Assembly: GCA_900088475.1 (NCBI GenBank)
Contig: FLMG01004723.1
Location: 1 to 64,000, forward strand
Reading direction: 5' to 3'
DNA length: 64,000 nucleotides
Source: Hyphochytrium catenoides
Taxonomy: Eukaryota; Protista; Hyphochytriomycota
Within the stretch, counting starts at the first letter, position 1; every line of letters begins with the position of its first letter. The notes beneath the pieces were generated by a model. It made no database searches, was not told the origin of the DNA, and was given only the letters and a program-made list of their open reading frames with translations. The position numbers were made by a program, and so were the translations under genes. Below are positions 1 to 64,000 of this stretch, piece by piece.

Positions 1-91
1 ATTGATTTGGGTCATCGCTGCACTGACGCCGCCCACATGGAGAGAAGAGTACACAGCTGGCCTCATTCGTCAAAGGGGTCGACAGTGACAA

Positions 92-95
<4 letters not shown>

Positions 96-126
<31 letters not shown>
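96..126. repeat. (AG)n microsatellite
   Basis: Perfect AG dinucleotide run visible in the sequence. Confidence 0.95.
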
Positions 127-132
<6 letters not shown>

Positions 133-301
133 ACTCGAAAGAATATAGAGAGGAAAAGTGAGTTCAAAGACCGCTTCCAAAGGAGAGGAGAGGCCACCAT
201 AAGCTGTTTAACCTGCATCAGAGCTAGGGGACGTGGCCTTAGCCCGTAGACTGTTATTTCTAGGAAACGGAGCTTGAGCTTTAATAACCAGTCCAACAAG
301 G

Positions 302-721
302 ATGAGACGAGTCAATCTCCTAAGCTGCACCGGCCATCTCCAGCGAAGGTCTCGGTCCGCAGTTCCCTCCTTGAACTCTCTGGGCAAAAGGACCAGGCTG
401 TTGTCTGTCTCGTCCTCTCCATCTTCTGTCATCCAGAGTCTGCCTGAAGTGTTAGAGTCTGAGTCCCTCATTCGAGGAGGAAAGGCCGCTTTAGCTCTCT
501 CTCCTCTCTCCCGCGCGATAGAAATTTGCGAGCACTCAATGGGCAGTGACTCAGAGTTCACCTGGGCAGCGCGGACGAGGCTCATTGAGCTCTGCTTCTA
601 TCTAGGGAACTATGAGAGGGTGGACAGGATGCTGGAGGTATCTTGCGGCTTAGTTTCTGCGTTTTGTACCACTTCCCGCGATCTATAGTCTCTCTCTCTC
701 TCTGTCTCTCTCGTCTCTTTT

Positions 722-755
<34 letters not shown>

Positions 756-19821: not shown

Positions 19822-22800
19822 TTAGGGGGCAGTAGCGATTGCAGGGTTCTGATGACCGAGACAAGCAAAGTCCCGTCCCAAGGATTGCTGATTACAGGGC
19901 ACCCCTATGCCAACACTGTTGACGGCGGAGACTCGAATGTAATGAGGATTGTTGGGGGGTAAGGTGAGCGTGTAGGAGCAAATGCTGTTCGCACATGCCT
20001 GCGTTGCTGATACATACAGGCTCGACCTTGAGAAGGACGCCCAGCCGTTTGCCTCCGTCGTTGACACATAATCAATGATGAATTGTGTAATCTGAGCTCC
20101 TCCATCAGCAACAACGCCTGCCCCTGACTCCGACGGCCCGCATAAACTAGCACTTGTGATAAAGTGCTCTGGGTCGCCCTGGCATGGATGCCCCGAATGA
20201 GGAATGACGGGCATCATCCAACTCAGGTTGACTTGTCCGCTCAGACCTGGACTGATATGAATATTGGCAGGTTTGCCAGGAGGCTGGGCACTGGGAACAA
20301 CGCCACCTGGAGATGCCACTTGGGCATACCCTCGTCCGGCAGCGTTGACAGCGTAAACCTGAAAGTAGTATACTACTCCTGACTGAAGTCCAATGATGGT
20401 ATGGCAAAGGCGAGTGTAGGACGAAGCGCTAACGTCAATGGGGACAGTGCCTTTCAGTGGATACTTGCTGCTGCTAGTAAAGGTAGGTACCATATCCCAC
20501 TCAATCTGATACGTCCGAATTTTGTCTCCACCATCATCAACCTCTTGCAGAGAACCGGGTGGATTCCAACACACTGTGACCTTGGTTGGAGACACTGCGC
20601 CAGCCAGTACCGATGATGGAGCTCCGGGTACGGTAAACGGATTAAGCGATTGTGGGATGGATGGCTGCCAATTACCTTGTCCCCTTGAGTTGACCGCAGC
20701 AACCCGGACGTAGTACTTGGTCTTGAGATCCAGCGGCTCAACTTGACTCCCTAATAGGGTTGTATATGGTGCCGTAGAGCTAAGCAAGCTGAAAATTGAG
20801 GTCCGAGTGGTTTGGGTGGTAAAGCTGGGGCTGGTACTATAGTGGATCACATAGTTAGTGATCTCATCTCCGCCGTTGTCGATAGGTGGACTAAACAGTA
20901 ATCGCAATTGATAGGCGTTGATAGCTTCAATTGTTACGTCTGTTGGTTTCCCAGGTGTAACCATTGGTCGCTGCGGGCCAGGAGCTAGCGTAGGAGCACC
21001 ATAACCGGCACTATTAGCCGCAAAAACTCGGACGTAGTACATTAATCCAGTCACGAGATTCTGCGTCTTTGGAAGTATCGTTGGTGCTACGCATTCCTGA
21101 TATGTGACTGCCTGCTGCCGAAGCTCCACAGTCACACCAATAGCAGATGTACCCACCTCAAAATACTGCCCTTCTGAGAGGAAAGTAACAGACCACACAA
21201 ATAGACCTGGGGTTGTCGTGGAAACTCGGCTTACAGCCACGTCATAACCGAGATCCCGGAATCTCATTTCCATGGAACCAGCGAACTGGCAGCTGCTGCA
21301 TGCCAGATTGCCATCAAGGGCAGACTCCTCAGCCTTAGAAGCGATAATGTCGTGTGGCATGGGAGCCGTATTGAGCGTAGAAGAATCTCTAGCATCTCTA
21401 ACAGACAGAATAAATGAGCCACCGATAACGCTCGGGCTTGTGTGCACTGTCCATACGGCAAGGGAGGAAGCGGATGGACAGTACACCTCGTCAACATAGG
21501 GCGAATCAAAGGCTGGACTCGTGTCCAGCTCAAAACGGTACTTCAGAATAGCATCACCACCATCCGATAGCGGCCGCATAAAGCTGGCTCTTAGATGATG
21601 TCGGTCTCCCGGCACCACTTCAAGAGCTACATTCATTGGGGGACCAGGTGCTTGCTTGGGAGGTATTACTGCAGATACAGTTCTACGCTGTAAGCCATTA
21701 CCAGCGGCGGATATAGGAGTGACTTGCATCATGTACCCTTTACCAGTCACTAGGCCAGTGACTTCATAGACATGGGTTGCTGCATCCACAGTAGCTGAGG
21801 CGTAGCCGACAGGGCTCTCGCCGACAGTGCAAGGAGGACAGAACAGCTCGCCGGTCAAGGGGTCAAGCACCGTGTTTCCCTCCCTGACCTCAACAGTCGC
21901 AGGAAGTTGTGGATCTGCAGGCACTAAACTTCCCGTGTCTATCAACATTGGTGGTACATCTTGTAGAGTCTCGCTGAAGGTGACCAGGTACGTGGGATTC
22001 ACACTTGATACCTTGGAGACTTGTACTTGCCGGGTGCCAGCTAAACTGTTGAGAACCTCTGCAACATCAGAGGCGGAGGCTGAGGCGCTAATCCAGTCAG
22101 AGAAAGGCGACCCTCCAAATTGCAGGCGGTAGAAGCCTGACATGGTGTTACCAAGGGTAATTTGCTGCACTTCAGCATGTCCTCCAGGACGACTCCCATG
22201 CTGGAGGGTCCCTACAATAAGATCAACATTAGCGCCATCCAGACTATGGCTGGGCCTTAGAGCTGGCACATCTCCGTCGGCAGCGTTGAACGTTACAGTC
22301 CAAGTCCGTGTATTGTCACTGACATAAGAGCCCACAGTGAGATCACCAAGCATAGGACTTGTCCCTTCCAGCAGCATCATAAGGTTATAACGCAGATCTT
22401 GAGCGGATGTAGCTGAAGTCATCATTGCTGTCTGTTGCCCTTTAAGGAACAGGCTCCAAGTACCCCCCGGCGCCACATGGCCGGCGTCCCATCTCATCTG
22501 AATGACTTGAATTTCTGGCCTGCTGCCACTAGACTCCCACCACTCGATGAGGTAACTGCTAATCTTTAAACCCCCCGTAAACTGAGGAGGGGCCCAGGAA
22601 AGGGTTGCGGTAGTAATAGGAAATTCCTGACTTCTCGGCGTTGAGACTTTAAGCAGACTTACGGGACCTGATTTCTGCGAGGGCCTAACGCTCATTCCCG
22701 AAAACACTGGTTGCCCGAATCCGGCTGCTGAAAATGATCGCACTCGCACGTGGTACGCAAGTCCAGGAGTGATATCATCAGAGATGATGTAGAAGAGTCT

Positions 22801-25800
22801 ACCACCATCATCTAGCTTGGAGAGGTTTTCGCGTGGTATACTGCTAACCAGTGGGTTTCCAAAGGCCTTTTCTGTATCCCAGGCTATTTCATAACCTGTG
22901 ATGGCGGTCGCCACATCCAAGCCACTCTTTCCTCGTCCATCATGGTCCGGAGGCATGAATGTCACTGAGATCTTTGAACCCGATCGCGCGTAGACCACCA
23001 AATCTTTTACCACCGAAGGAGGCTTCGGACCAGTCACAACTGCTGAAGCTGGGTGACCCCATTGGGTGTTATCGGGAGGATTGCCGCTGACACTTAGCTG
23101 CTGAGGGATAATATGGTTACGGGCCGCAATCCGGAAGTAGTACTGACCGGCTGTTGGCACTCGAATAACAGCCGAATACGGAGGGCTGCCTGTAGGGGTG
23201 ACCTTGACTGCCTCATACCTCCAAAATCTTATCATCGCGCCTTCTGGATGGAAGGTATCCATGGCTGGACATGGGGAAGAGCTAAATGATGGGGGGGTAA
23301 GGATAATTGTTTCGTGGGTACTGCTATCGACAGTCCGTCTGCATCCATCGAAGAAGAGCTGGTCACCAGGTTTGAAGGAATCTGTTGGGCTATTACCAGT
23401 TGCCAGTCTGATGGTATTCGTGGAGAACGAATAACTGGTGCCACAGCTGTGGCAAAAAACAGCGTTATGTCTAAACCGGTTATCAGTATCAAACTGGATA
23501 TCATAATAAGAGATCTCATAATCTCCAGAAGCTGAAGGATTCTCAGGCGGTGACCAAGTAATGCGAACCTCATCATCAGATAGTGCTTGGAGGTTGATAT
23601 TCAAAGTAGGCCCCGGCAGACCCTGAGGAGTCGCTGTGATTACCGATTCCGTAGGACCCCATCCTTTCTTGTTATTCGCGGAGACGCGCAGATGGTATTG
23701 CCTACCTTGAATCAACCCGTTCGAACCCGCAGGGATATAGTGACACTTCTGGCAATCAATACCCTGAGTTACCACTGTGGCACTACTTGGGAAGACTTCT
23801 ACAGCGTGAGCAGATAACGTTGAGATAGAATCAAGAGGTCCATAAAAGTGGAGAAGCCATTCCCAACCAAAGGTGGCCTGATAGACGACCTCTCTTACAC
23901 TTGTCACACCCTTGTAACTTGTAGGCAAACCATTCAGGTCGCCCAAATACAGTCTGTCTGCTCTCATGCCGTTAGAAGCCGCGTCCGTGATTAGATACAT
24001 GCTGTCCGAGGCCATCCTACTTGATACGGAATCAGGCAGCACCGTGTACCAGGAGCCTCCAACGTATATCTTATCTCCAGGTATACCAAACTGCCCAGCA
24101 GCAAAGTCGCAGATCACGCCTTCCGCGCACTCCAGATAACTCTGGCCGGCAACAGCGCTAACTGCTGTGTTTAGGATTTTAGCCTTTGAAGGTTCTTTGA
24201 TGACCCTTACAGAAATCTTAGGGTCCATGACTGCTTCAAGCGCTATTTGCACGTCGGTAGCTGAGGACCATGCATTTAAATAGACTAGATCTTTTGATTT
24301 ATATGCCAATTGGAACGTTCCCGTTACGACATGTTTGAGGTTGGTCAGAATGCCGGATACGTCAGAGGAGGTGTCACCCGGAATCAGTAGTGAAGTGCCA
24401 GTGCCTGTGAGTAATGACCCATCGAAAGACAAAGTATCCAGATGTTCGAAAACTCTGTGGAAGCGAATGTAGATCCTATTTCCATCGCAAACACGGGAAA
24501 CTGGCGAGTTGGCGTATACCTCAATACCTTCTGTTGGAATTGATGATAACACCTGCAGAGCTTGCCTCACTTCAGCCAAAGATGCAGTTGCCGGTATTCC
24601 TTGAGTAGTCTCTGACTTGAGTGAAACAGTAAATGAGCCTCCTGTGGCGGAACAGACAAAAGTCTTGATGGCCTTCCTAAATGGAGTTCTCCCCGCGACT
24701 ACCTCAACGACGTGGACGTCTGAAGAGCTCGATTCAAGCAGAGGAAGAGGCCCAATCTCTTTGAGAAACGTAATGTCGTAAGGCTGGGCGCTCTGGATAG
24801 TTCCTGTCGCGGGTGTTATCCGGATTCCCCCACTGGATATAGAGCCCAAACTCTCAAGGGCTTCAACCAAATCGTCAATGGTGCTAGATCCAGGCAGAAC
24901 ATGCGCCGTCTCTTCGGTTCTGAACCTTAGATTGAAAGATACAACTCCATTCGCAATGGTAAGCTGTTGAACTGCATAGACCACTTCATAGTGCTGGTGG
25001 TATAGTGCTGTAGGCATTGCCATGACCACTTTCAGGTGCCGCTTAAGCCTTTCTGACTCGTTCAACACTTCACGCCCGTATGCATATGAACGAAAGCTAG
25101 TGCTGGTATCCCATTCCACTTGATATTGGGAAATAAGGTTGCCGTTGCCCTCGCCGGCAAGATGCGAAATCCAGAGCTGCGTGCCCGTAGGACATGCACC
25201 TTTCGTTACCTCGTCGACTGCGACAAGCACTGCTTTCCCAGTGAGTCTCGTTGAGTCCGCCGTCAGAGAAGGGATGTCGCAAGCACCAGACAAATGACCA
25301 TCATAGAATGTAATAAACCATTCATAATCACCCTGCCAACTAAGTGGGCCGTTCTGCGATACAGTTACTGTTCCAATCCCAGGCAAAGCCTCCAGGGCTA
25401 CCTTCATTTCCTCCGCAGTGGCAGAGGCTGAGAGCGGCTTACTCATTGATCCAGATCCCATTTGTAGTCTGAAACTGCCCCCAATTACATTAGCAGCTGT
25501 TAAACGGGTAATGTGAACTGTCGCGTTGATACCAGTCAATCCGTTGACTGCTTCATAATATAGCCCAGGAGCGCTATTCAGGAAGGTGATTACCCATGTG
25601 AAGCCACCTAAGCACCGAAAGCAAGCGGTTAGGAACCATCTCTACACATTGGCTTGATAACCCTTACCTCTTGCGTCCGGTCCTGTGCGCTGCACATCAA
25701 CCTCTTCAATTCCGTGAACCTCTGTTAAAATATCCTCAAAGGTGTGCGGATCAACATTGTAAGGGATGACAGCGCTCTGGAAAACTGCAAAGTGTCCCCC

Positions 25801-28800
25801 TAGATGGTTGCCCCCTCGTATGGTGCGGACGGAGCACTTGGAGGGCCCATCCACGTTACAGACAAGATTTGGTATGTCCGCGAGGTCAGGGTGGAAAACA
25901 AGGGTGATGAGCCTTATATCCTGGCTCTCTCCTAACGGGCTACCCTCAATAACCTCTAATCGGTTTATAGCTGGAAGAACTTCAAGATCTGCACGCAGAT
26001 CAGCCATTGGGGAATCACCAGATAGAGTCTGGAATCTCTTGCTAATCTGAATAAGGAGAATAAGGGGAAGGAAGTAGAGGAAAGAAAATTGTAAGGGTTT
26101 TTCCGTGACGACAGTAAATTGCTAACCACTTACCAGAGTTGCTGCCACCGTAGCTCCGCTGGGAACCATAATATTGTCTTGGACCTTCATGAATGGCTTA
26201 CATATTGAACCAGAGAGTTCAACATTTAGGTCAGGGACATTCCCTGTTACCACCATTTGGTTTCCTGTGAAGTATATCATGTACTCCAAGCCTACTTGAG
26301 ATTCAGACGTGGTTCTTGTACTTGTTACAAAAACGTGATCAACGTTATTTAGGCTGTTGAGCTCTGCCTGAATAACTTCGGCCGCTTCGTTCCATGCAAG
26401 GCACCCCGTGGAAAATGATTGACTGTTGAAGACAACCTCAAGTTGATACTGACCTTCAATCAGCTCACTGTCAGCCAGTACTTGAAGCGAGTATACCGGA
26501 GTATTTGTGCCAACCGCCGGATAAAGCGTGGCGGTGCTAGCTTCCACCAGAATATTCGGACTTGAGGTGCTTATAACTAGCTCTTCAACGTCCCCAGCAA
26601 CTTCAGCTCCAATGAATCGTACCTGATGTTCAAATCCTTGACAAGAATCCTCCAGAAGATCAGACGTCTCAACCTCCACACAGACCGAGGCGAGGCAGTT
26701 CATAGAGTCAAGCTGATTCAATGCTGTGGCCAAGCCCTCTCCAACCAAATCCCAGGCAAGTGGTCCAGTGGTAGAAACAATACCACCGCGGGAAAATGCA
26801 AGACTGAACGTTCCCGTCGCCCCCGGAATCCGGCGGCAGACTCTTATTGTCTGTTCCTCTGGAATACGTAGAGTTATGCTGCCTACGGTAGAGCCCTCGC
26901 CCACAGGAGTAACTCTGACTTGCTGAATCTCGCCAATTGGATCCGCGGTTGTCTGAACTTTTACGACCTCATGAAGTAGCCGCGCATGAGTTGAAACTCG
27001 TTGAACCTCGCGGACGTAGGTTGAAGGCCCAACCTCCAGGTCCATGACGGCTTTGGGTCTATCATAAGCACTACCTATTATGACATTCGATGGGGCGGAA
27101 TACCCAAGTAAGTTTTTGGCTGTTACGCGGAAGTGGTATTGGAGACCCATTTGAAGGTCTTCAAAGAGTGCAGAGGTCGGAAGACCTCCAGGAATTAGTG
27201 CCTTAACGACGACACTCGCATTAAGCCCGCGCAAGCTAGACCGATTCTCGTCGTACTCTAGATCAACCTTTGCCTCATTGCTTGAGAACCTGATGTAGTA
27301 GTTGAAACCAACCTCCTTGTACAAAGTCAGGGTCTTTGGTAGCGGTGCTTCGCCAATAAATGCAGCCATCCTTGTTGGGTCTTTCCATAATCCAAGAGGA
27401 AGAGTATGACCGTCATAAGGCGGAGGTCCGGTGTGCTCGTTGGGAATACATCGCTTCTGACAGGCAAGAGAGATGCTTCTACTTGGCCCATGGAAGCTGT
27501 GTCCTTGTGGAAGGCTTAGCTCTAAAGATAAGTATTTGGGGGTGTTGAAGTAGAGGGAGTAAGTTGAGCCCGCTTCTGGCCTTCCGGGGACCGTCAGTCT
27601 TCTGGTGACCGTTGTCGTGAACTGTAACTCTAGAACTGTAAGAATTGCCTTCTCGATTTCTGCATCGGTGGCGTCCCATGCGAAGGGTCCTACGGTAAAA
27701 CTCTGTCCATCAAAACCTAGTGTCACGGAAAAGTAAGTAGAAGTATCCCCACTGCTAAGCCCATTGAGACTGGTGTCTGTGATAATAATAGTCCATTCTG
27801 GCCGTTCAGTCTTGAAGATGGAGAACATTTGCGGTAGCATAGATATGGAAACCCTTCCTTCAAAATCACCCATGAAAGGCCTATCGAGAACAATTTGGCG
27901 AGACCGCTCTCTTGCCGGAGCATTCCCACCTCGCATTAAAATCTCTGCTCTCACCATACTATTGGCTCCACCCACATGCTGTCCAGTGCTTCCACAAGAA
28001 TCGATACCTAAGTCGACACCAAATCTGGCGGTCAGAGCTTGCGACGTTTGGAGTTCTGGGAATCCGACAAAGAAGACCAAGTACTCATAGGAGGCTTTCC
28101 CCTGGCGAACTGTTTCGACTTTAGAGTGTATATAGCTCTGTAATGGAGCGAGACAAGCATTATCCGAAGGGAGTACAACGAATTCTGGAACGTTGCCTAA
28201 CAGGCGGGCATTCCTCCCTCCTGCCCTGGAACCCTTAAAGTGCAGAGTGTAGCTGTATCCGTAGGCGCTGGACGGACTTCGCAAGTCTCCACTTCTTGTT
28301 ACTACAACTTCATCCAGGGGTCCAAGAAGTCTATTGGAGCTGTCGTTGGTATCCACCATCGACTTGACCGAATCCTCCAACTCAATGGCCGTGGAGCCCA
28401 ATTTGACACATGAGCTGCGATACTCCACACCACCAGTTTGCACGCTTAATCGGTAATATGTGTTATCTGCATCCGTTAAGACGGGCCCCTCACTCGCAAA
28501 GGAGATCTTTTGAATTTCACTGACGGACATACCATCGCCAAACCTGCTGACCATAACTCTGCCGCGACCAGGGTTAGAAAAGGCGGGTAGTTGCTCTAAG
28601 GCATGTTGTACGTCACCAGCTTCTGCACCCCAATTCAGGCATGCTGTCTTCTCATTGCTGCTTTGCGTCAGCACCCATTCCGCTCCTTGCTTGATGTTAC
28701 CAGCATCCACGGCAAGAGTGATCTTTTGCACGGGAGTGTAGCCGCCCTCGACGACAATGGACGCTTCAACCTGAAAGTTAGCATTGGCATGCGCAGACAC

Positions 28801-52800: not shown

Positions 52801-55540
52801 AGCTGAAATGCACCTTTCATTGCGTTGGTTAGTCCAGAGCATTCTACCAGCTGCTGCTCAAAGCCCAGGAAGCCCTTAATGGCTCGATTGACTGATAACT
52901 CAGCTGCCGTACCGTGTAGTGTGGAGTCTAATGGTGATGAGTCGAAGGTGGATGTAACCAACAGTGGAAGGTCGCCCCACCTTCCTGACAGGGCCAAATC
53001 ATCATTGGATAGAAAGGTTACATACCAAGAATAACCTGGAACTACCGTCCCCTCATCATCTGTTCTTAAAAAGCGGTTGACTTTGACGTCGCCTACAGTG
53101 GGAAGCTCCCTTAAGGCCTGTCGTAGTTTGTCCGCACTCACATCGTGTGAAAGGGAGGAGGTAAACATCCCTTGGAAACCAAGGCGGAAAGTGCCACTAA
53201 GGTCAAACGCTGCTGCAGAGAGAGTGACTACCTGACAGGAAGAGGTTGAGTAGAGTATATCATCTGGAGAAGACGCACCCCAAGGAAGGAGTGCTGGCAG
53301 GTCAAGGAGCTCCCATTCGATGAGATAGGACACCACGTCTGCTCCCCCATTGTCTCTGGCTGGAGGAAAGCTGACAGTGACCGAAGTCGCATTGTTCGTT
53401 GTAACCGATATGTACTTGGGGGGTGATGCAGAAGTCCGAGGGGCTTCACTCGCAGGAACTGACATAGTAGGGCGGTGAGAGAACCCCATGGAATTGTAGG
53501 CGTAGACTCGAACATAGTACTGCTGGCCCAATTTTAACCCAGTGATGACATATCGGCACCCAGTTGGTTCCGAACAGTACCCATCGCCTTCACTGGGATA
53601 ATATTCGTAGCTACCGAGAGCTGATGCTTGGGGAGCTGATGAAAAGCTGGAAGTTACGTCCCACTCTACCAAGTACTTGATGACTCTTGAGCCCCCGTCA
53701 GACTCAGGGCTGGTGAACACAACCGCTAAAGAGGACCCAGAGTCCATCTGCAGCAGTACCCTCCTGGGCGAATCTGGTTTCTGAATAGGCGGAGCCAAAG
53801 ACATTGGCGTTGACACCTGCGGCAGATTGAAACCCTCTTCCGTAAGCGCAGAAACTCTAGCGTAATACGAAACACCTGGAAGCAGCTCTTCAATTAAGTA
53901 GGACCAACTGGGTACCGCTGGATGCGAGGTAGCGTTAATGTCTACTGCTTGAAGGCCTTCTGGGAGTTCACCAGGGAACACATCCAAGGTATAGTGTAGA
54001 GGTTCCAGGGCATCTTCTGTGACGATAACTAGCCTACTACCGCGTCTCGAAGGCACGTCGGCCAGAAACTCTACGGTCCATACATAGTTATTCGATGCGT
54101 GGCTCCTGGTTACGGCCACCCCGTTTATCGTCGTTAGGGCGTTGAGACTGGATTCTACCAATTTTGCCGACGCGTCAATCGGCAAGAAATCGGTAAGCTC
54201 GTCATCAAATGAGATTCTGAATGGTCCTTGGGAGTCAATTAGCGTGAGCTTCTGAATCTCATTTATAGGCAGACTGGTATACCATTCTATTCGATAGCTG
54301 CTCACCCGAGATCCCATAGGGTCCGGTGCCAGCCAAGTCAGTAGCAAAGAGGTTGAACTCTTCCTGACAGACGTGTTGTCATCCGGAAGGATAATCGAGA
54401 GTTGCAGCCCGCTGCCGTAAGAGATTTGCGAGGCATAAGAGCGGGAGACCAGGGAACGGGGTAATGGGAGGCCCCATGCACTCCATCCTACCAAATTCAT
54501 TGCCCTCACACGGAAGAAATATCGCTGCCCAGCTACTAAGCCCTCGATTGTGAGACTAAGAGTTTTCAGCTTTGTCGTATACAGAGGATGGAGAGAGAAA
54601 TCAGACTCCGTTCCCTCGTACCGGCCAAGTGCAGTCCCATTATTTCCACTGTTAAAAGCTTCTTGGACATCCCATTCGACAGCATACAAAGAGGTCTTTG
54701 CGTAATTGTCAAAGGAAGGCGGTTTCCAGGACACTTGGATTGAGGTTGCTGAGCCTGCAATCCTGCGTGTTATCACATCCTGCGGTTGTAACGGAGGAGC
54801 CATCGGATTCTCCTGGACACGTCGAGCTGACCTACTGGAGCCTTTGCTATTCTTGGCACTGACTTGGACGACAAATCCGCAACTTATAGCCAGACATGCA
54901 GGGTAGGATTGAGCAGTTACAGACTCTCGGTCGGAGGACAAGTCGTGCATTTCATAGACAATCGGTTTCAGAGCAGATAAACCGGAGGCATCCAGATAGT
55001 ATGAGAAAACTGAACCGGTAGATCCTTGAGCACTTTCTGAAGCGAGGCATGCCAAAGAAGATCCAGGCACCGCAGCTGCAACCTGTCCTCCACTGCATAC
55101 TCTCACCAAACCCGGCTCGTTGTGTATATCCCGTAAAGAGCTAGAGCTAATGACAACATCAACTAGGTCACCCGGGTTCTCAATGAACGAGATCACAAAA
55201 ACTCGTGAGGTAGCGTCATGCGTGGCTGTTATGGCTGCTGTCCGCACAAAGCTTATGCCCTCAAGGGCCGTTCTGAGATCATTTTCGGTTAGGTCGTAGC
55301 TTAGCGGAGATGTTGCTTCTCCTGCCATCGAAAGAATGAAGGAACCCCTCGTCACTTCGTTGGATATTTTAAGAGTCTGAACTTCAATCGAACCGTATTG
55401 GCCAGCAGGCCACCACTCGATATCATACCCAGCGATGCGCTCTCCCCCGTCGTCAAGGGGTTGCTGAAAGGACAGCTTCAGGGACTTCTCACTGACAATT
55501 GACAGAGAAGGAGACGTAGGCGGTAATGGCTTCACACTGT
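19822..55540 (-). other. FN3-repeat region of the giant protein
   Basis: The pattern P..P..V...S..S..V.W.PP..DGG..I..Y..EWD...I.GL..G..Y..RV.A.N..G.G recurs. About 32 F-strand motifs were counted by hand. Confidence 0.85.
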
Positions 55541-58500
55541 CTATCTCCAACCTAAATGGAGAGCCTGCTATTGGCAATGTATCGTAGAATAGTCGATTTG
55601 TGGGGATGATAGCCCTTGCTTGGGACAAACTAGACCAATAGAGTTTGATACTTGCAGGACCCGTGTTTTCCCTAAACTCCAGCTTGATAGGAGCAAGGCG
55701 ATCATGGCTGAGGGGCACAACCGCGGTACTTGAAGCTGTCTTTGCAGTAGTCGAGTTGGAATCTCTATCAAAATCATCAATGAGAAGCACGTTATCCACC
55801 CAGAGCCGAGCCCCATCGTCATATTCCACTGTGAAAGTAAAATTTTCAGTGAAAGGGGGTTTGACGTAACCTGTCCAGCGGACGCTAATAAAGTCCTTGC
55901 CTGTTTCTGTTATGTGGTCAGAGGTAGTCCAGCTGAAGTCGATTTCTGCATCCACCCTTTCCATGACAGCGTCACCATACAGCCAGCGATTATTGAAATA
56001 GAAGCCGTTCAGACCTCCACCCAAGGCTTGGGAAATTTCAATATCATATACGCCTTTCCGAGGACCCTCGTACTTTACCTCGTACTGCCCGTCTGCTATG
56101 TAGGAGATGTGGACTTGAGCACTTGGAATACCCACAATGTTTCCCACAAAGCTGGGCCCAACTTCCCCGGCAACTGTCTGTACAGGATTGCCAGCAAGAC
56201 CCCCTACAGAACGTGGGCAGTAGCCTCCAACACTTACCATTGGCTGCGGGCCATTGAGCAAGTACCCTTCACCATAAATCTCTTCGGGAGTTGAGCTGGT
56301 AGATTCCAGACTGATAATCCAGCTGCCAGGACCCTTTGACCCTGTGACAACTGAAGCTCGGTGGATGTCAGGTAACGTTCGCAGAGCTGCGGCCACTTCT
56401 TCTTCCGAGCTGTCACTACGGAGGTCCGGAGTGCGTCTGCCATTGTACTCGAGAAAAAAAGAACCAGCTGCATCCGGAGCTCCCTTCGCGATGACCTCTT
56501 GCTGACGATTACGGTCGCAAGAATATATTGATAACAGCGCAGGATCACCTGCTGAGGTCCGTAACTTCTTTCCATCACCTATCAAGTTAGGAACATCACC
56601 AAGCGCAGATGCAAAGGTCACTACATACTGGTAACCCGCGCGAGAGTGCTTGAATACAGCCAGTCCAGTTCGCGAGCGATGAGGGAAGGGCGCATTGAGC
56701 CGGATAATAGTGGGATCAATGCTAACTATAGCGAAGACAGGGCCATCATGACCAATTCGAATCCAATCGTCCACTGCGAACTGATCTGTCAAATCTGAGG
56801 TCGGGCGCACAACGTCTTCCAAGTAAGAGACCGTAACACTCGTTTCCGCTACAAGTATGTTGGCAGACGAAGTAGTGACTTTGACTGCACCGAGCCCGGG
56901 CAAAGTGCCTAGAGCGAGCTGAACTTCCTGAGGGGACGCAGCACAAGAAAGCTCTACCCAGTTTCCGTTATATCCAATCTCAAATGATCCAGTAAGTGTG
57001 TGCGCAGGATTGCCAACTGTTGTTTCAATGACGGCAACTTCCTGGACTGGCCCGTCGAGAATTCTATTTGAGAAGCGATCGAAGCTCTCTATAAAGAAGC
57101 TTGACGTTTGCTTGTATGCCGAGAGCGGAATATCGTTTACCTTCGATCTTTCAGCACTAAGGGGAGCGGGGCGCACGTCGACCTGAAAAGGACAGACTCC
57201 CCTTTGTGAGCCAACTCCGCTGTTGTCCCCAGTGAAGATTTCGACCTCGAGATTTTGCAGTTGTGAGGATTGCACCCCAATGACAGGAAGTGGACCGATT
57301 TGGTAAAAGTCGAGCAAGGAGCTGGTACTTGATAAAAAGGTTACGACAAAGTCATACCCTCCGGCCGCTACTAGATTCCTGGTCACTGACACTGTTCCCA
57401 CTGTCGGCAAGGCGGCCAAGCTATCTGCCAAAGTAGTTGCGGCTTCAGCATCGGTTTTGAGGGCCAAGGCTGCAGCAGATATCTCCTCAGTATGGGCATC
57501 ACGAAAGGTCAGGCGGATGAATCCAGATACTATATAAGGGTCACTAAACGTCAAACGCAAGACTTGTATCTCTGGCAGTAGGACTGATCCAACAGCGGGA
57601 TCCGTCTTGATGTGGTGGCTAACACCTTCGATAAGCGTCCTGGTCATGGAACGGGTCCTCTCGCCAGCTGGAATAAGTTGATCCCGCGATGCTAGTTGAG
57701 GAACGTTCCCAGCACCTAGGAAGGTCACTTCGTAGTAAAAGCCGTTCTTCGCGTCAGCGTCCGCCTCTCGAAGCTCATGACCAAACTTACGACTGACAGC
57801 AACCTTGCCAACTCCATTCAGGGCTTCAAGCGCCTTCTGCATTTCAGTCTCGGAGCAGTCCCATCGTAAGGCCCAGGTCTCTTCCCCCTCAAATTGAAGA
57901 TAAAAATAGCCCCCGCGATCATAAGCTGATGGAAACTTCGTCAAGATGACTTGGACTTCGGGCTGGGTACCATAGGTGATAGCAATGGTATGAACACCCT
58001 GAATGGTAGGGGTAAATGTGACCTTAAACTTGCCATCACCCAGTCTGGTAATGTTACCAACTGTGGCCGACTCCGACCCAGGCCTGGCATTAGGATGAAA
58101 GATATCAACCCGGAAGTGGTCCGAAGTGTCGTTCTCCTGATCGTTCCCGCCTCCATCCTTAGCCTGAATTGTGAAAGTGGACACCTGGCCAGCCTCGCCT
58201 TGATACAGACCCCTTCCATAAGCCGTCGTGACTCCAGCGTCAGTTTGGGCTGACGTCACATTGAACACAATTGGGCCATTGCCAACCGCTGCCGCTTCCC
58301 ATCCCTTGCGAACCTGACGTACCGTCAAAGAAGCCAAATTTCCCCTGAGCTGTGAGCCATCGGCTACCATGGGCTCGAGATCGCCCTCACTAGGAGATCG
58401 AAGGAAGGTGATTGCCCAGGAGCATGTCCTGAGACCATTGTCTGGGCAGTTAAATCTTACCACATCAACGGTGTTCTCAGGCACATTTGACAGTTCTTCG

Positions 58501-61500
58501 AGTGCGGACTTCATATGTACCGCATCAACATTCCAGTCTAGCCACGTAGTCGAACGAGTAACTTTATCGCCAGAGTCATCCATCCCTCGAAACGTTAGCC
58601 GAAACTTACCGCCATTCATGTCTGACAGGGCTGAGGTGGTCACTGCCTGGATCTCAGAGACTAATGACGAGGAAACGTCCAACCGGTAGGTTCCCTTCAC
58701 TTGCGGTGAAAAGTAAATGGAGTATGTACCCGTCCTGCTACCGCCTTTGAAAACATTTACCCCAAACAAATCTGGTCCCTTATAAATGGTTTGCAGAGGC
58801 ACATTGCTTGGGTCGATCACACCAGACTCTTCGCTTACCCGAATAGGTAGGCCTCCATCCAGTAACAAGGTGTCCCCTCTTTTGAGAGTATTTGCGTGAT
58901 TGGTCCAGGTCGCTGGGTAACTCGCCATTCTCAACATCGAGCTACCCTTTAGAAGTATTCCTTTACCCAAATAGATGTAGTCGTTTGCAACGACTGAGCT
59001 CAGAGAATATGCCGAGGATGAAAAGCTCTTGCATTGATGCCCCGACTTGACGTAAATGCTTGTTATACTGTTTCTTGCGGACCATTTAGCGTCCAGAACG
59101 GTGAAGATACATTCTTGACCAAGTAAAGAGATGTCAGGGTTGAAAACTGTGATTCTCATACCAGACTTCACAACAGGGTTAGAGTGCATTTGGAGTGGTG
59201 GGCTACCAACTAGGTTGAGTGCCACTCCCAATACATTGCTCTCCAAGGATACGACGCAGTGCGTACAGATTGAGCTGGGTTCGTAAACGACGGGGCTTAG
59301 AGATACCTCCTCGTTCTTCCGGCCAACAGCTGCCCAACCAGAGATCCCAACAAGACGAACCTGCCATTTCTCTTTCCCACTATTGAAAATCTCATTGCCT
59401 CCAGCGTCCTTCGCAAGAATTTCGGCCTCGAAGACCTCCAGAGCACGGCCACCAAGTAAGCCATCGCCAGTCACCCTCGAATTGGAAGCATTTAGACTTC
59501 CTGGATGGACCTGCACTCTAAAAGGAGAGTTATCTATGTTTCTCTCATACAGCAGGAAAGAGGCTGGAATGGGCCGGATTGTGAAGCTGGAAGAGCTCCA
59601 TTGTAGGTCCAGGTAAGCAGCGCCGCGAATGTGGACGTACTCGACAATAAAGCTGTGTGGATAGGTGCTGTTCAAAGATATTGAGCCCGATACGGCACCG
59701 CCGGTTGTGGTCCGGTTGTTCGAAGAGATGGAGTCCAGGACAATATGCCCAGCTACAGTGAGGCGGACGTGGTCCCCGGCTGTTGCTGCAAAGGTATATA
59801 GGTCCGACCGTGGCACCCTAATCCTTCCTGTGAGCCGAAGGCTAAAATATTCTGCAGGAAAGTTCGGAAGAGGTGATCCCTCATCCCACCTGAGACTTAG
59901 CGAGGAGAACAACGCGCTCGAGTCACAAGGGGTCAACGCAGTCCCTGATAACCGCAATGAGGGAGAAGGACAGTGCCGAGACGAGCCAAGAACAGGTTTC
60001 GTAAAGTTAGTGTTACGAAATAGATTCCCAAGAAGACCGCCCGGACGAGTAATAGTTGCCTGCAGCTGGTGCTCTCCAGTTACCTGAGGAGTAAAGGCCA
60101 AATTGTATCTACCAAGTGCCCTTTGCTTGTGATTCGTTGTTGCTGTACTTGTGCTCATTTGACCAGTGGGATCGCTCACCTTTAGAGACAGAATGTCTTC
60201 CTCTAAAGGGCTTTCAACAGCATTCAAATAGTAGTCTCGTAACTGAACGGAGAATACGCTAGGCTCGTTTACCACACCTACCGGTTTGGCGTCGTGGGTA
60301 CACATTACAGGATCTACCTCGCCAGCCCGCACACGCAGCCCTTTGGCTGTCGACGTTAGAATGTCCTCCTCATTAAAGCTAATTTGGACATCATAGTGCC
60401 CGCTGATCTCTGGCGTGTATGCTACGATTAGGGCCCCGCTGTCATCTTGAGGCAGGATGTAGTCTAGGCCTTGAACACGCTGCTTTATCTCGACTTCAGC
60501 CACAATACCCGTAAGCTGTGAGGCCGTCATAAGTGGCAGGTTTGTGTATCTCTTGAAGTTTATCAAAATCTCCGTGCTATCATCCGGATCGCAGACTGTT
60601 CCCTTAGTGGCGGAAACTGACACAGGGAAGCCAAAAGAGTTAGCTATTTGCTCCTCGAACGCAGATATTGTGGTTCCAGCCAAAATATTAGCAGTAAGGG
60701 TGCTATTGCCAATGCCGAGAGAGAGCAAAAAAGATCCACTACCGGCGCCAGACAATCGGCAATGTAAAGACTGTACTTCGTGGCCCTCAATCCTAACTGT
60801 CCTAGTAGAGTCTCTGGCGCCAGCATGTTCCTCTGAGATCAGGAAGTCCAAATTGGCACTGCTACTAACTGAGGGTAGGTCAACATTGCCAGCATCGGTC
60901 GAATAAATGAGCCTAATCTCAGATGAAGTGCCCGAAGGGCATATTACTGGAAATGCAAGAGACCTGCCCAAAGGTTCAGCAGAAACGCCTAGTGTCCTGA
61001 TGGCATTGTTCAAAGCTTGAACGCTGTCCCGAGCCATAAGACTCACTGAGCCAGAGTTAAATGTGAAAGATATTGCCGCCAGATCACAATTCTCCGACTC
61101 AGGGCAGCGACAAGAAAGGATCTGTGTCTCAGCTAGACCCGGCACATAAGCTTGCATCGACATACGAATGGAGATGGTATCGAGGCTCTCCAACGGTATG
61201 TCATTGCCTACCGTCCCATTTTGCAGTTTCCTCGTCATCACTTGAGGTGGTGCCTGGTCATCCGGATGCTGTATACCATCTGAGAGGACTTGGACAGGCT
61301 CTAGGTTGCCAACCGTCCATTCTTTCTGTCCGTTAAAGACAAGAGTATAGATATTCCAGACGTATGGACTCCGGTCCCTTAGGCGCATTGGATCGAATCC
61401 AACAGAGTCTTTGACAACCGTAACCGAGAGACCGTCTTCCAGCGCGTTGATAGCAGACTGTACAACCTCAGCATCAGCATCCCAGGGAATTCCTTCCGTC

Positions 61501-64000
61501 AACATGCTGCCAAATTTCAGCTGAAATGTCCCCCATATCGGATGTAGCCCTTGGACGACCGGAATCTGTCCCGAATTGTCCTCCACTTCGAAAATTTGAA
61601 CCCCAACTATGGATTTGTAGGCAATCGGGGGCAGGTCCCCAAGGGCATCCTCAAAGCGAATTACAACTCTTAGAGGGTTAGAACTTGCACAGATTACTTG
61701 TGAATGGTCGGAGGGCTGAATGACAGTGACGGGCGTTATCTCCGAAAACACTGATTGGAACCGAGCGATCGAGTCCGTCGCTTCCAGAGTCCGACTTACA
61801 CCTCGGAAACTGACGCTGAAGCGTCCCGAACTGCCCGTGCACTTCAAGCTTTGGATTTCAGGGCGGAAGGAAGAAGCGGCATGAGCAACTCTTCCCTGAA
61901 CTATCGTTTGTACATCATAGAGACGCTGGTCTCGACCTTGCAGCGTGAAGTTTGACAAAACTCCTGCTCTGGCCTGTTCTAGACCAAGGCCGTAGGCTAT
62001 TGAGCTTGCAGCGTCAGGAGGTCCCGGGCGAACATTTATCAAAAAGGGACTGCCTATTACATCTAAACCATCGCTGCTCCTGACACTAAGGGAATAGGAA
62101 CCAGATACGAAAAGCGTGTAACCAATGTCATATACTCCAGACTGTGCAGGTGCTTTCACAGTCAATAGTCCCGCTAAGTTGTTCGACATCTCGACAATCT
62201 CCAAAGGCTTAGCACGCCATGCGTCATAGTCATGGATCCAAGTTATGACCCATTCGACCTTTGTGAGCTTGACACTCTTGGTCACCAGGACAGTGCTCAA
62301 ACCGTCCGAAAGCGAATCCAAGACAACCTTCAATCCGTACCTGGAAATTGAAGGGGAGATTTCGACGGTAGTCATGTCACCATATGAGAGCTTAAAAAAG
62401 CCCTTAGTCACCGTTTTATCCTCAAGGGTTAGCGTTTGAACTGCCGATGACGATAGAAAGCGCCCTGCTTTAGAAGAGAACAGCTCCGCGATAAAGACAT
62501 CTGGCTGCCCTGGGCTAGTCCTCAAGTTTGAGAACTGATCTAAGGCTGATACTCTAAAGAAGCTCTCAACTCCTGAAACAGTTATCGAAAGGCCAGCATC
62601 AGGCGGTACACCGCCGTCAGACACAGTTGAGCTCTGAGGATGGAGATCTCCGTGATGGACTATTAACCCGCCGTACCCTACTTGCTGAGAGCCACAGTTG
62701 TTGATACCGGTGGGGCAAACTTTGATCGGGACACCATCCACTGCTACTTCAACGTCATAAGTACCAGCAATAGTGATGGTGTAACGAATCACATAACTTC
62801 CATCACCGCTGTCGCTGACCTGACCATAGAAGGAAATATGCGAGTCACTCTGTTTTCTAAAGCTGGCAGTAAAATGTGAGCCTCCCCTGTCTAGGTAATT
62901 CCCAAAGCTATCGACAGCTTGGATAGAGAAGACCCCTACCTCCCCTGCCACAGCTGCCAGTAGGCCATTGGGTGAAGGAGACGACAGCGGAGCCGCGTAC
63001 GAAGTAAGGTGTGAAGCTTGAGCCGGGTGGACCTTAAGGTCAAAAGGACTGCACCTTTGCTTCTCGCCCTTTCCGCAATAAATGTCAGTGTCGGCAGACC
63101 TTATGTAGAGCTTGTAGAATCCGCTCTCGTAGACGTTGTAAGTCACTCGGTACTGGCCCGCACCCAGATAGGTAGGAACCATATCGGGCGCCACCTTTCC
63201 AACGGATGACTCGATGTATACCGAAAAGATGTCTCCGCTAGTAGTCTTATTATTTCCGAATTTGTCCTTAGCCTGGATGGTAAATGAAGCTTTTTCCCCT
63301 GCTATGGCCTCATTCAAACCGCTACCGAAAGCGGTTGTATACGGAAAGTCTGCTGAACCAGGCAATATACTGACAGCTGCTGGACTTCCCACAACGTGCA
63401 TGGGATAGTAGAGATAACGGGTCGGTATAATCTGCCTAAGCAGGCTAGGGCTACTCCAGTATAGTTGGCATGCCGCCGGCCCTTGACTGTGAATGTACTC
63501 GATGGCCACATCATGAAAGTTGCCACTTTGCAAGGAAGCTGTAACTCTTAGTTCCCTGAAATCTGGAGTTCCCATGGGTCCCAGTAAGTCATTATCAGCA
63601 TCTAAAAGTAGGTTGTGATCAATCCACAGTCGTACAGCTCCATCCGTGAGGACGTAAAGGGTATAGGTCTCAGTGGTGGGTGCCAATAGTTTGCCATCCC
63701 ATCGTACACTAACAAAGTCTCCAGCATCAGGCGTGAGAAGACCATTCCCCCATTGGAAGTCAATCGATGGGTCCACTCTTTCTTCCACCGGATCCCCTGT
63801 GAACCACTGGTTGTTGAACAAGGTAGCGGTGAGCCCACCCTCCAACAGCTGCCGTGTTACAAGCAAATATTCTCCTGGAACTTTGGGTTTGTAGCTTCCT
63901 CTATAATAGGGCAAACCAAGTACCTCTTTTCTCACATCAAGCGATATCGGCCCCTGAGAAGTTATCGCATTCTGAGAACCATCGACCACCTTGATGACCC
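19822..64000 (-). CDS. Giant modular protein (>=14,629 aa, 5'-partial) with filamin-type Ig repeats, 3 PA14, ~32 FN3 and nested unnamed repeats; complement(join(19822..25607,25668..26046,26134..35206,35347..>64000))
   Basis: The 9548-, 3033-, 121- and 1905-aa ORFs join through three canonical introns: AG|gtaagg 35346..35207 cag|G (phase 2), CTG|gtaagt 26133..26047 cag|ATT (phase 0), and G|gtaagg 25667..25608 tag|GT (phase 1). The joins restore split motifs (PYR-ITIAGL..YFARVTAFN; GPDARG-GFTWVITF). The frame is open to the window edge. Confidence 0.92.
55540..64000 (-). other. Filamin-repeat/PA14 region of the giant protein
   Basis: Filamin/ABP280-type motifs include TTAFGSGLNEAIAGEKASFTIQAKDKFGN, DSGDGSYVIRYT, TAYGRGLYQGEAGQVSTFTIQAKDGGGN and GSPF.I.V. 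PA14 domains lie at about 63405-63840, 59545-60042 and 55580-56022. Confidence 0.8.

What the first reader, a model, noticed from the sequence alone, without database searches (positions are those of the whole stretch)
19822..64000. Giant gene of at least 14,600 aa (roughly 1.6 MDa or more), still open at the window edge
Seen: 43.9 kb of coding sequence, including one exon of at least 28.6 kb. No obvious DNA-level tandem repetition was seen, so the repeats look old and diverged and not like an assembly artefact. Filamin, PA14 and FN3 domains plus many paired cysteines point to an extracellular structural or adhesive role (inference). Automatic annotation would probably call it 'titin-like' or split it into several genes. 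It is a candidate building block of a cell-surface filament, scale, stalk or flagellar appendage (speculative).
Basis: partly seen in the sequence, partly recalled or inferred. Interest (0 to 1): 0.85.

Follow-up and report, generated by a model that had tools for sequence, protein, structure and literature searches.

The report
Giant secreted FN3-repeat protein gene
This is a real four-exon gene in a stramenopile protist that encodes at least 14,629 residues (1.57 MDa) of a probably secreted protein, with about 2,500 more residues expected upstream; it is the near full-length form of a widespread, unstudied family whose only expression record is a water-mould relative switched on during spore and cyst formation.

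Summary
On the minus strand, four open frames joined by three GT-AG introns (140, 87 and 60 nt) give 43,890 nt of coding sequence. That is 14,629 aa with no internal stop, still open at base 63998. Homologues align across the splice junctions. The only allelic indels seen lie in intron 2, and allelic substitutions are mostly synonymous.

The protein holds 3 PA14 domains, about 10 filamin repeats, about 29 FN3 domains and 56 copies of an unnamed ~90-aa module ('EVQ'). About 17 of the FN3 domains are split in one loop by inserted modules. The nearest solved relative of the EVQ module is the tail-tip protein gp23 of mycobacteriophage Bxb1.

The gene is collinear with two giant stramenopile families that databases call 'titin' or 'FN3 protein'. 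In oomycetes these are two genes, and the second has its own signal peptide. Here, in a brown alga, in one MMETSP transcript and in several metagenome contigs, they form one reading frame.

Three things point to a secreted surface fibre or adhesin: signal peptides in relatives, a strong shortage of N-glycosylation sites, and sporulation/cyst-stage expression of the Saprolegnia orthologue. No RNA data were available for this organism, so function is inferred. I rate it a new variant of a known kind, of moderate interest.

The parts
35347..63998 (-). Exon 1 (28,652 nt; residues 1-9550 of the visible protein); the frame is still open at the window edge, so the 5' end of the gene lies beyond base 64000
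   Evidence: collinear with A-type homologues from their residue ~2,150-2,780 onward
35207..35346 (-). Intron 1 (140 nt, GTAAGG...CCAG, changes frame)
   Evidence: 36 homologue alignments span the junction, the five shown without a gap at it
26134..35206 (-). Exon 2 (9,073 nt)
26047..26133 (-). Intron 2 (87 nt, GTAAGT...TCAG, holds an in-frame stop)
   Evidence: the only allelic indels in 5,951 nt (9 nt at 26058 and 1 nt at 26096) lie here
25668..26046 (-). Exon 3 (379 nt)
25608..25667 (-). Intron 3 (60 nt, GTAAGG...TTAG, holds an in-frame stop)
   Evidence: 39 homologue alignments span the junction, the five shown without a gap at it
19822..25607 (-). Exon 4 (5,786 nt) ending in the stop codon 19822-19824; the C-terminus matches the conserved end of B-type homologues
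63426..63836 (-). PA14 domain 1 (residues 55-191)
61803..63338 (-). Cluster of filamin-type Ig repeats (residues 221-732); further filamin repeats occur up to residue ~2655
59580..59906 (-). PA14 domain 2 (residues 1365-1473)
55605..56015 (-). PA14 domain 3 (residues 2662-2798); the best match is to the PA14 of RsgI3
51354..52361 (-). Model unit (residues 3880-4215): FN3 N-half, two EVQ modules, FN3 C-half
   Evidence: alignment A2; model pLDDT 88.5; single FN3 domains align at rmsd 1.7 A over 95 residues spanning model residues 3-336
51891..52208 (-). Reference copy of the unnamed 'EVQ' module (56 copies across the protein)
50691..50729 (-). Point (residues ~4424-4436) where the complete diatom A-type proteins end
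41079..41150 (-). Point (residues ~7617-7640) where oomycete B-type proteins begin, just after their own signal peptide; here it is internal, with no Met-plus-hydrophobic leader

Best explanation
SHOWN: 19822-63998 (minus strand) is most of one protein-coding gene with four visible exons. It encodes at least 14,629 aa. The chain is built from about 29 FN3 domains, about 10 filamin-type Ig repeats, three PA14 lectin-type domains near the N-terminal side, and 56 copies of an unnamed ~90-aa beta-beta-alpha-beta4 module ('EVQ'). About 17 of the FN3 domains are interrupted in one loop, at profile position ~45 (taken to be the C-C' loop), by one or more inserted modules. In the model of one such unit the two FN3 halves close around the insert. 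The gene is collinear with two giant stramenopile families: A (PA14-filamin-FN3-EVQ) and B (FN3-EVQ). They are separate genes in oomycetes but continuous here and in several other lineages. INFERRED: about 2,500 further residues and a signal peptide lie upstream of the window, for a total near 17,000 aa and 1.8 MDa. The protein enters the secretory pathway and is released. There it forms, or is part of, a long surface fibre or adhesive coat. The FN3 and filamin domains would make the axis, the EVQ modules would be side decorations, and the PA14 domains would bind carbohydrate. It is most likely laid down when zoospores or cysts are made. The near absence of N-glycan sites suggests that its surfaces must stay bare for protein-protein packing.
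For: Gene reality: the open frames and splice sites are. Homologues align through junctions 1 and 3 without gaps. The only allelic indels lie inside intron 2, and 24 of 40 listed allelic substitutions are synonymous, with codon positions 9/5/26. Domains. Split FN3: (Z 13.6, 95 aa, rmsd 1.7 A, model range 3..336). EVQ module: model pLDDT 89; Bxb1 gp23 at E 3e-33 and TM 0.72-0.75; no Pfam family. Collinearity: A-type residues ~2,160-6,380 map to ours 1-4,424, and B-type residues ~46-7,328 map to ours 7,617-14,512. The same continuous arrangement is seen elsewhere: metagenome contig L002 (ours 22-8,361 in consecutive same-strand frames), P0031, P0032, P0101, the Choristocarpus protein P0085 and the MMETSP transcript P0078. 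Secretory route: signal peptides occur in A-type (P0002, P0047-49, P0052, P0053/77) and B-type relatives. Sequons number 42 against 85 +- 8.7 expected here, 5 against 57 and 9 against 66 in oomycetes, but are neutral in titin and twitchin. Stage: SPRG_03974 (= P0025, aligned to ours 7,628-12,574) has expression values of 0.03 in mycelium, 6.66 in sporulating mycelium, 16.44 in cysts and 8.30 in germinated cysts, and is listed in the predicted secretome (PMC5771568).
Against: No RNA run could be listed for this organism, so splicing, a single transcript and expression are unproven. The N-terminus lies outside the window, so no signal peptide has been seen for this protein. No TM segment, GPI-like tail or known polymerisation motif was found. 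The stage evidence comes from one paper on one distant relative (~30% identity) and is transcript-level only. Sequon frequency goes the other way (enriched) in Ectocarpus and Aureococcus. About 43% of the chain is not assigned to any module.
Confidence: 0.6

Rival explanations
1. Component of the flagellar surface: it is part of, or an anchor for, the tubular hairs (mastigonemes) of the anterior flagellum that define stramenopiles.
For: The family is spread across flagellated stramenopiles (oomycetes, centric diatoms, brown algae). The orthologue is expressed when zoospores are made. Atlas feature and structure searches place the EVQ module near oomycete EGF-like clusters, scores 0.73-0.84 and TM 0.77; I take these from memory to be mastigoneme-type proteins. 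There is a full-length but insignificant match to OCM6 of entry 9ufe (E 0.06-0.11); from its name I take 9ufe to be an Ochromonas mastigoneme structure, which I did not check.
Against: No piece of the protein matches any 9ufe chain at E <= 0.01. The protein has no EGF-like domains. Expression in Saprolegnia peaks in cysts, after flagella are shed. An A-type homologue exists in Aureococcus, which has no known flagellate stage (my own knowledge).
Confidence: 0.15
2. Two or more separate products: the long frame is transcribed or translated as separate A-type and B-type proteins, as in oomycetes, through internal promoters or cleavage.
For: In oomycetes B is a separate gene with its own signal peptide, starting exactly at our residue ~7617 in at least 7 representative clusters. 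Diatom A-type proteins end at our ~4424.
Against: There is no stop codon in 9,551 codons across both boundaries. There is no Met-plus-hydrophobic leader at the B start here. An MMETSP transcript (P0078) and a brown-alga protein (P0085) run through the same boundary. Post-translational cleavage cannot be excluded.
Confidence: 0.1
3. Gamete recognition or adhesion protein related to plant GEX2 and Chlamydomonas FUS1.
For: Pfam Ig_GEX2_N scores 58 bits summed over weak stretches, alongside filamin repeats. Atlas neighbours carry Filamin plus Ig_GEX2_N.
Against: No single Ig_GEX2_N stretch passes on its own. No transmembrane segment was found; by my own knowledge GEX2 and FUS1 are single-pass membrane proteins. 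The filamin part is under 5% of the chain. Oomycete expression is in asexual spores and cysts. No paper links GEX2 to stramenopiles.
Confidence: 0.06
4. Intracellular titin-like cytoskeletal ruler or spring.
For: Databases name the homologues 'Titin'. FN3 domains match titin at E 1e-25 to 1e-34. Filamin repeats are classically cytoplasmic.
Against: Pfam reported no I-set Ig and no kinase domain. Relatives have signal peptides. Sequon frequency is strongly non-neutral, unlike the titin and twitchin controls. PA14 domains are lectin-type.
Confidence: 0.03
5. Assembly artefact or decaying pseudogene.
For: None beyond the unusual size.
Against: Contigs from DNA runs of 2011 and 2017 cover nearly all of the 5,951 nt laid, with substitutions only, apart from two intron indels. 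Synonymous changes are in excess. There are no DNA repeats that could mis-assemble. The gene is collinear with homologues over its whole length.
Confidence: 0.01

Closest known systems
Oomycete giant 'FN3 domain' proteins, B type: Saprolegnia parasitica SPRG_03974 (P0025), S. diclina SDRG_15222 (P0015), Phytophthora infestans KAF4149257 (P0039), Albugo 'similar to titin isoform N2B' (P0044)
   Same: Collinear at 25-33% identity with our residues ~7,617-14,620, down to the conserved C-terminus. They use the same FN3-plus-EVQ units.
   Different: They are separate ~7,400-aa genes with their own signal peptide. Here the same sequence is the internal and C-terminal part of a chain at least twice as long, with no leader at that point.
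Stramenopile PA14-filamin-FN3 giants, A type: Thalassiosira profunda ACHAXT_009546 (P0002), Cyclotella cryptica HJC23_005096 (P0077), Ectocarpus (P0006), Phytophthora nicotianae 'Titin' KUF76226 (P0035)
   Same: Collinear at 30-38% identity with our residues 1 to ~4,424 (diatoms) or to ~7,100 (oomycetes). They share the same Pfam set.
   Different: They stop after 6,000-7,800 aa, whereas ours runs on into the B part. They carry ~2,500 N-terminal residues that lie outside our window.
Mycobacteriophage Bxb1 tail-tip protein gp23, and the C-terminal domains of its capsid and tail-tube proteins (PDB 9d93, 9d9w)
   Same: The EVQ module matches gp23 at E 3e-33 and TM 0.72-0.75. gp23 also shows N-terminal half-modules in a row followed by C-terminal halves.
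   Different: Only the ~90-aa module is shared. The phage proteins are virion parts of 280-690 aa with no FN3, filamin or PA14 domains.
Insulin / IGF-1 receptor FnIII-2 domain with its insert domain
   Same: It is an FN3 domain that carries a large insertion (in its C-C' loop, from my own knowledge) and still folds as one FN3. It appears among the structural matches that span our split unit.
   Different: The receptor insert is largely unstructured and occurs once. Here the inserts are folded modules (80-520 aa) and the design recurs about 17 times.
Giant bacterial repeat adhesins with a sugar-binding PA14 domain (for example Marinomonas primoryensis ice-binding adhesin, ~1.5 MDa; from my own knowledge, not tested here)
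   Same: A working analogy: a long chain of beta-sandwich extender domains that presents lectin-type PA14 domains.
   Different: No sequence relationship was shown. The repeat types, export route and anchoring all differ.
Titin / twitchin
   Same: Size class and FN3 domains (E down to 4e-34). This is the name automatic annotation gives the family.
   Different: Pfam reported no I-set Ig and no kinase domain. Signal peptides in relatives and the sequon bias point to a secreted protein.

Membership tests
Stramenopile A-type giants (PA14-filamin-FN3-EVQ) | Collinear sequence similarity over thousands of residues | tested here: met
   More than 20 A-type homologues listed align in order to ours, from residue 1-22 to 3,600-4,700 (oomycete forms to ~7,100), at 30-38% identity
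Stramenopile A-type giants (PA14-filamin-FN3-EVQ) | Domain set PA14 + Filamin + fn3 (with weak Ig_GEX2_N and GLEYA) | tested here: met
   (same Pfam accessions in the query and the hits)
Stramenopile A-type giants (PA14-filamin-FN3-EVQ) | N-terminal signal peptide followed by ~2,500 aa of FN3/EVQ units before the first PA14 | not testable with these tools
   This region lies beyond base 64000. It is seen in P0002, P0047-49, P0052 and P0053/77 and in L001 and L002
Stramenopile B-type giants (SPRG_03974 / SDRG_15222 type) | Collinear similarity down to the conserved C-terminal end | tested here: met
   ours 7,617-14,620 against residues ~30-7,400 of 15 or more proteins; the C-terminal motifs align
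Stramenopile B-type giants (SPRG_03974 / SDRG_15222 type) | Own start codon and signal peptide just before the conserved 'PEDVPGxP' FN3 | tested here: not met
   Ours reads '...IVGMSGASVVGPPRRFW' inside a continuous frame with no hydrophobic leader. The oomycete forms have the leader
Titin / twitchin / obscurin | I-set Ig domains and a C-terminal protein kinase domain, cytoplasmic | tested here: not met
   Pfam reports no I-set and no Pkinase. Only the FN3 domains match
GEX2 / FUS1 gamete adhesion proteins | GEX2 N-terminal Ig-like domain plus filamin repeats | tested here: inconclusive
   Ig_GEX2_N scores 58 bits as a sum, but no single stretch passes
GEX2 / FUS1 gamete adhesion proteins | Single-pass transmembrane anchor | tested here: not met
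   No 19-residue window has a Kyte-Doolittle mean above 1.9, and only one (residue 8387, inside a domain) is above 1.7
Stramenopile mastigoneme proteins (Ocm / Sig / PnMas) | EGF-like domains | tested here: not met
   No EGF family appears in Pfam
Stramenopile mastigoneme proteins (Ocm / Sig / PnMas) | Sequence similarity to the solved chain OCM6 (PDB entry 9ufe) | tested here: inconclusive
   EVQ profile against OCM6 gives E 0.06-0.11 over the full module. The whole-piece searches find nothing
Fungal PA14/GLEYA adhesins (Flo, Epa) | N-terminal PA14 lectin on a Ser/Thr-rich stalk with a GPI anchor | tested here: not met
   PA14 and GLEYA are present, but the 'stalk' is made of folded FN3/EVQ domains and the C-terminus has no hydrophobic tail
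Bxb1 gp23-type module (unnamed; the 'EVQ' module) | Profile and fold match to the solved gp23 repeats | tested here: met
   E 2e-27 and 3e-33; Foldseek TM 0.72-0.75; 56 copies in the protein

The most novel reading that the evidence does not exclude
The family is an undescribed kind of eukaryotic extracellular fibre: a nearly glycan-free 'bottle-brush'. FN3 domains would form the axis, and each would carry folded side modules inserted in one of its loops. These modules would be of a type otherwise found on actinophage capsids and tails, which implies ancient sharing between phages or bacteria and stramenopiles. The ~17,000-aa single-chain form seen here would be the ancestral state, later split in oomycetes, and it would build the zoospore or cyst coat or its hairs.
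Probability: 0.15. Interest if true: 0.75.

Novelty: new variant of a known kind. Interest (0 to 1): 0.5.

Why it matters
Giant modular surface proteins are well known, and this family is already in databases, but only as 'titin' or 'hypothetical' entries that appear to be often truncated or split. This window shows most of the chain in one frame: the A and B families of oomycetes and diatoms are parts of a single ancestral-looking gene. It also shows an unusual recurring design, FN3 domains split by inserted folded modules, built on a domain that has no Pfam model and whose only solved relatives are phage virion proteins. For oomycete biology, the composition of cyst coats, adhesive material and hairs is still largely unknown. 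This family is large, probably secreted, expressed at spore stage in the one species with data, and almost free of N-glycan sites, which makes it a concrete candidate to test.

Tried and rejected
- RNA evidence: no RNA run could be listed for the gene. Only DNA runs were found, so splicing was tested indirectly through homologue alignments and allelic indels.
- Finding P0031's own contig: the metagenome scan returned only a 27%-identical relative, L001.
- Neighbourhood of the oomycete A and B genes: the look-up of encoding contigs refuses proteins over 5,000 aa, so I could not test whether A and B are adjacent in oomycete genomes.
- Mastigoneme link: the OCM6 match stayed insignificant even with a richer profile, and no piece matched 9ufe chains. 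I kept it only as a rival.
- GEX2 link: there is no TM segment, only summed weak Pfam hits, and no stramenopile literature.
- Pfam on the ten unassigned stretches of 130 aa or more: nothing. Two of them resemble each other, which may be a third unnamed module.
- The Bxb1 paper (PMC12124961) is not held, so the phage domain's proposed role could not be read.
- Naming the organism: this was not achieved. A tree of the C-terminal 2,650 aa puts our long branch beside an unnamed JGI sequence, next to the oomycetes, with weak support (80-83). No database protein is closer than about 38% identity.
- The window's own gene model did not appear in any protein search.

Full report
OBSERVATION. All long open frames in 19.8-64 kb lie on the minus strand. 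They are 35346-63998 (9,551 codons, running into the window edge), 26125-35259 (3,045), 25645-26121 (159) and 19825-25641 (1,939). Canonical splice sites sit between them: GTAAGG...CCAG (35346..35207, 140 nt, shifts the frame), GTAAGT...TCAG (26133..26047, 87 nt) and GTAAGG...TTAG (25667..25608, 60 nt). Joining the exons gives 43,890 nt including the stop at 19822-19824. That is 14,629 aa, 1.574 MDa and pI 5.3, with no internal stop.

TESTS OF THE GENE MODEL. No RNA run could be listed, so I tested the model in three other ways.
- Homologue alignments: thirty-six and thirty-nine homologue alignments span junctions 1 and 3, and those shown have no gap at the junction (for example 'QRTGPDAR|GGFTWVITF' against 'SRSQPDGQEGYTWLITF'). 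Junction 2 lies in a length-variable stretch.
- Allelic indels: contigs from DNA runs of 2011 and 2017 cover nearly all of 20350-26300 (each has one or two empty bins) and show many allelic substitutions. The only indels, 9 nt at 26058 and 1 nt at 26096, fall inside predicted intron 2.
- Allelic substitutions: of the 40 listed, 24 are synonymous and 26 hit third codon positions. That is the pattern of a frame under purifying selection.
TRF and the repeat finder see no DNA-level repetition, so mis-assembly of repeats is not an issue.

COMPOSITION. Pfam finds PA14 (three copies), Filamin, fn3, GLEYA and a summed weak Ig_GEX2_N signal in the first 4,700 residues. Beyond that it finds only fn3-type hits. 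I built profiles from the protein itself. They give 3 PA14, about 10 filamin and 46 FN3 hits, plus 56 copies of a ~90-aa module that starts with an 'EVQ'-type strand.

THE EVQ MODULE. It has no Pfam family, even at E 1. Its AlphaFold model is confident (pLDDT 89; order beta-beta-alpha-beta-beta-beta-beta). In the PDB its only clear relatives are virion proteins of mycobacteriophage Bxb1. These are tail-tip gp23 (E 2e-27, rising to 3e-33 with a 34-copy profile; TM 0.72-0.75) and the C-terminal domains of the capsid and tail-tube proteins. Atlas neighbours are unnamed diatom, actinobacterial and phage clusters.

SPLIT FN3 DOMAINS. Only 11 FN3 hits are whole. Sixteen N-halves and eighteen C-halves pair up around inserts of 80-520 aa, always near profile position 45. 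I modelled one unit (residues 3880-4215: FN3 N-half, EVQ, EVQ, FN3 C-half) with 25 homologous units as the alignment (pLDDT 88.5). Single FN3 domains of PTP-delta, LAR and neogenin superpose on it at 1.7 A over 95 residues, and the aligned range runs from model residue 3 to 336 (Z 13.6). So in the model the two halves form one FN3 around the 240-aa insert. Insulin and IGF-1 receptor FN3 domains are among the matches; from my own knowledge their FnIII-2 domain carries an insert, which makes them the known precedent. This partly agrees with the 'nested domain' notes on this window, which I did not examine further. About 43% of the chain is unassigned. Ten stretches of 130 aa or more have no Pfam match.

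RELATIVES. Two protein searches found dozens of 5,300-7,900-aa proteins from oomycetes, diatoms, brown algae, Aureococcus and metagenomes. Mapping them onto our chain shows two families.
- A type (PA14-filamin-FN3-EVQ: Thalassiosira profunda, Cyclotella cryptica, Ectocarpus, Phytophthora nicotianae 'Titin'). Their residues ~2,150-2,780 onward align to ours from residue 1. The diatom forms end at our ~4,015-4,436 with a conserved C-terminus. The oomycete forms run on to ~7,100.
- B type (Saprolegnia SDRG_15222 and SPRG_03974, P. infestans, Albugo 'similar to titin'). They align from their residue ~30-60 to our 7,617, and down to our last residues.
In a search of 1.84 billion representatives with our residues 7,400-8,400, at least 14 proteins start their match at query position 216-236 and at their own residues 3-58. 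At least seven of these open with a signal peptide and the motif 'VFYPEDVPGxP'.

THE BOUNDARY IN OUR GENE. Our sequence has no leader at that point and simply continues. The continuous state is not unique to this genome.
- On the 51-kb metagenome contig L002, consecutive same-strand frames are collinear with our residues 22-8,361. The B start lies ~1,000 codons inside an open frame.
- P0031 covers our 2,655-9,838, P0032 covers 5,978-11,762 and P0101 covers 5,610-8,045.
- A protein of the brown alga Choristocarpus covers 5,876-10,382.
- An MMETSP transcript (P0078) covers 6,871-14,603.
So the one-gene form is widespread, and the oomycete two-gene form looks like a fission, though no rooted test was done. 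A-type relatives with complete N-termini have 2,475-2,782 residues before the point where our window begins (offsets; N-termini). The whole protein is therefore probably near 17,000 aa, which is an inference.

LOCATION AND ROLE. No transmembrane segment or hydrophobic tail is present in the visible 14,629 aa. Complete relatives of both types start with signal peptides.

An unplanned observation supports the secretory route. N-x-S/T sequons number 42, against 85 +- 8.7 in block shuffles and 92 for the reversed control motif. Oomycete, diatom and metagenome relatives are even poorer (5 against 57, 9 against 66, 11 against 57, 3 against 64). Ectocarpus and Aureococcus are two-fold enriched. Intracellular titin and twitchin are neutral. 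A frequency this far from neutral implies that the chain meets the ER glycosylation machinery. Why most lineages avoid glycans is unknown; bare surfaces for packing is my guess.

The only paper that names any member lists SPRG_03974, SPRG_19863 (9,440 aa) and SPRG_05384 (6,547 aa) among predicted secreted proteins of Saprolegnia parasitica. For SPRG_03974 it reports expression of 0.03 in mycelium, 6.66 in sporulating mycelium, 16.44 in cysts and 8.30 in germinated cysts. The paper proposes these proteins as candidates for the hooked-hair bundles or adhesive matrix of cysts (PMC5771568). PA14 domains matching the RsgI3 PA14 domain (E 9e-42), which binds carbohydrate by my own knowledge, fit an adhesive or wall-binding end.

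MECHANISM I COMMIT TO (about 0.6 overall). This is a secreted, very long chain. The FN3 and filamin domains form the axis, the EVQ modules project from the FN3 loops, and the PA14 domains bind glycan. It is laid down at zoospore or cyst formation as a coat, hair or adhesive fibre. The gene structure, the module plan and the family relations are shown. Secretion, timing and role in this organism are inferred.

RIVALS.
- A flagellar-hair role (0.15). It rests on taxon spread, weak Atlas links to oomycete EGF-like proteins and an insignificant OCM6 match. Against it, there are no EGF domains and no significant match to any solved mastigoneme chain.
- Separate products from one frame (0.1).
- A GEX2-like gamete adhesin (0.06).
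- A cytoplasmic titin-like protein (0.03).
- An artefact or pseudogene (0.01).

ORGANISM. It was not identified. Runs are coded. A rhizosphere metagenome holds a near-identical 225-nt piece. No database protein is closer than about 38% identity. A tree of the C-terminal part puts our long branch next to the oomycetes with weak support. Unchecked notes of this scan mention mastigoneme-type genes elsewhere in this genome. This points to a flagellated heterotrophic stramenopile near the oomycetes, possibly a hyphochytrid, but that is a guess.

VERDICT. The gene is not a new kind of system. It is the near full-length, unsplit form of an uncharacterised stramenopile family. Its noteworthy features are the unnamed phage-related module, the recurrent split FN3 domains and the extreme sequon bias.

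Noticed in passing
whole gene 19822-63998, and homologues P0002, P0015, P0031, P0039, P0040, P0006, P0060: N-x-S/T sequons are about two-fold depleted here (42 against 85 +- 8.7) and up to 20-fold depleted in oomycete and metagenome relatives. They are two-fold enriched in Ectocarpus and Aureococcus. Titin and twitchin controls are neutral.
   Followed up: partly
window 51891-52208 (one of 56 copies): The unnamed EVQ module has no Pfam model. Its only clear solved relatives are Bxb1 mycobacteriophage virion proteins. Atlas neighbours include Actinomycetota and phage tail and capsid clusters, so the domain is shared between phages or bacteria and stramenopiles.
   Followed up: partly
window 26058 and 26096: A second allele carries a 9-nt and a 1-nt deletion inside intron 2. 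A rhizosphere metagenome contig (run X4) carries the same 9-nt deletion, so the organism or a very close relative lives in soil.
   Followed up: partly
window 20350-26300: About 104 variable sites in 5,951 nt across the two DNA runs (40 listed and 64 not shown). This is high heterozygosity or strain variation, and it fragments the Logan contigs.
   Followed up: no
L002 (ENA ERZ4198739, NODE_518, 51 kb), locus 1-29696: A metagenome contig is filled by one collinear giant gene that the gene caller cut into six back-to-back 'genes' (3,148, 1,402, 3,231, 832, 480 and 3,307 aa).
   Followed up: partly
residues 5962-6053 and 7785-7889 (window ~45840-46115 and ~40332-40646): Two stretches assigned to no module resemble each other (E 6e-6). 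This may be a third unnamed repeat type.
   Followed up: no
EVQ half-hits, e.g. residues 8527-8577, 8837-8874, 11449-11495, 13127-13190 (N-halves) and 4774-4849, 6069-6145, 12663-12734 (lacking the first strand): Partial EVQ hits suggest that EVQ modules are themselves split or nested. Bxb1 gp23 shows the same pattern: three N-halves in a row, then C-halves.
   Followed up: no
window 13127-14743 (minus strand): A neighbouring open frame has an IQ motif and an EF-hand. The other five long minus-strand frames in 3.3-13 kb have no Pfam match.
   Followed up: no
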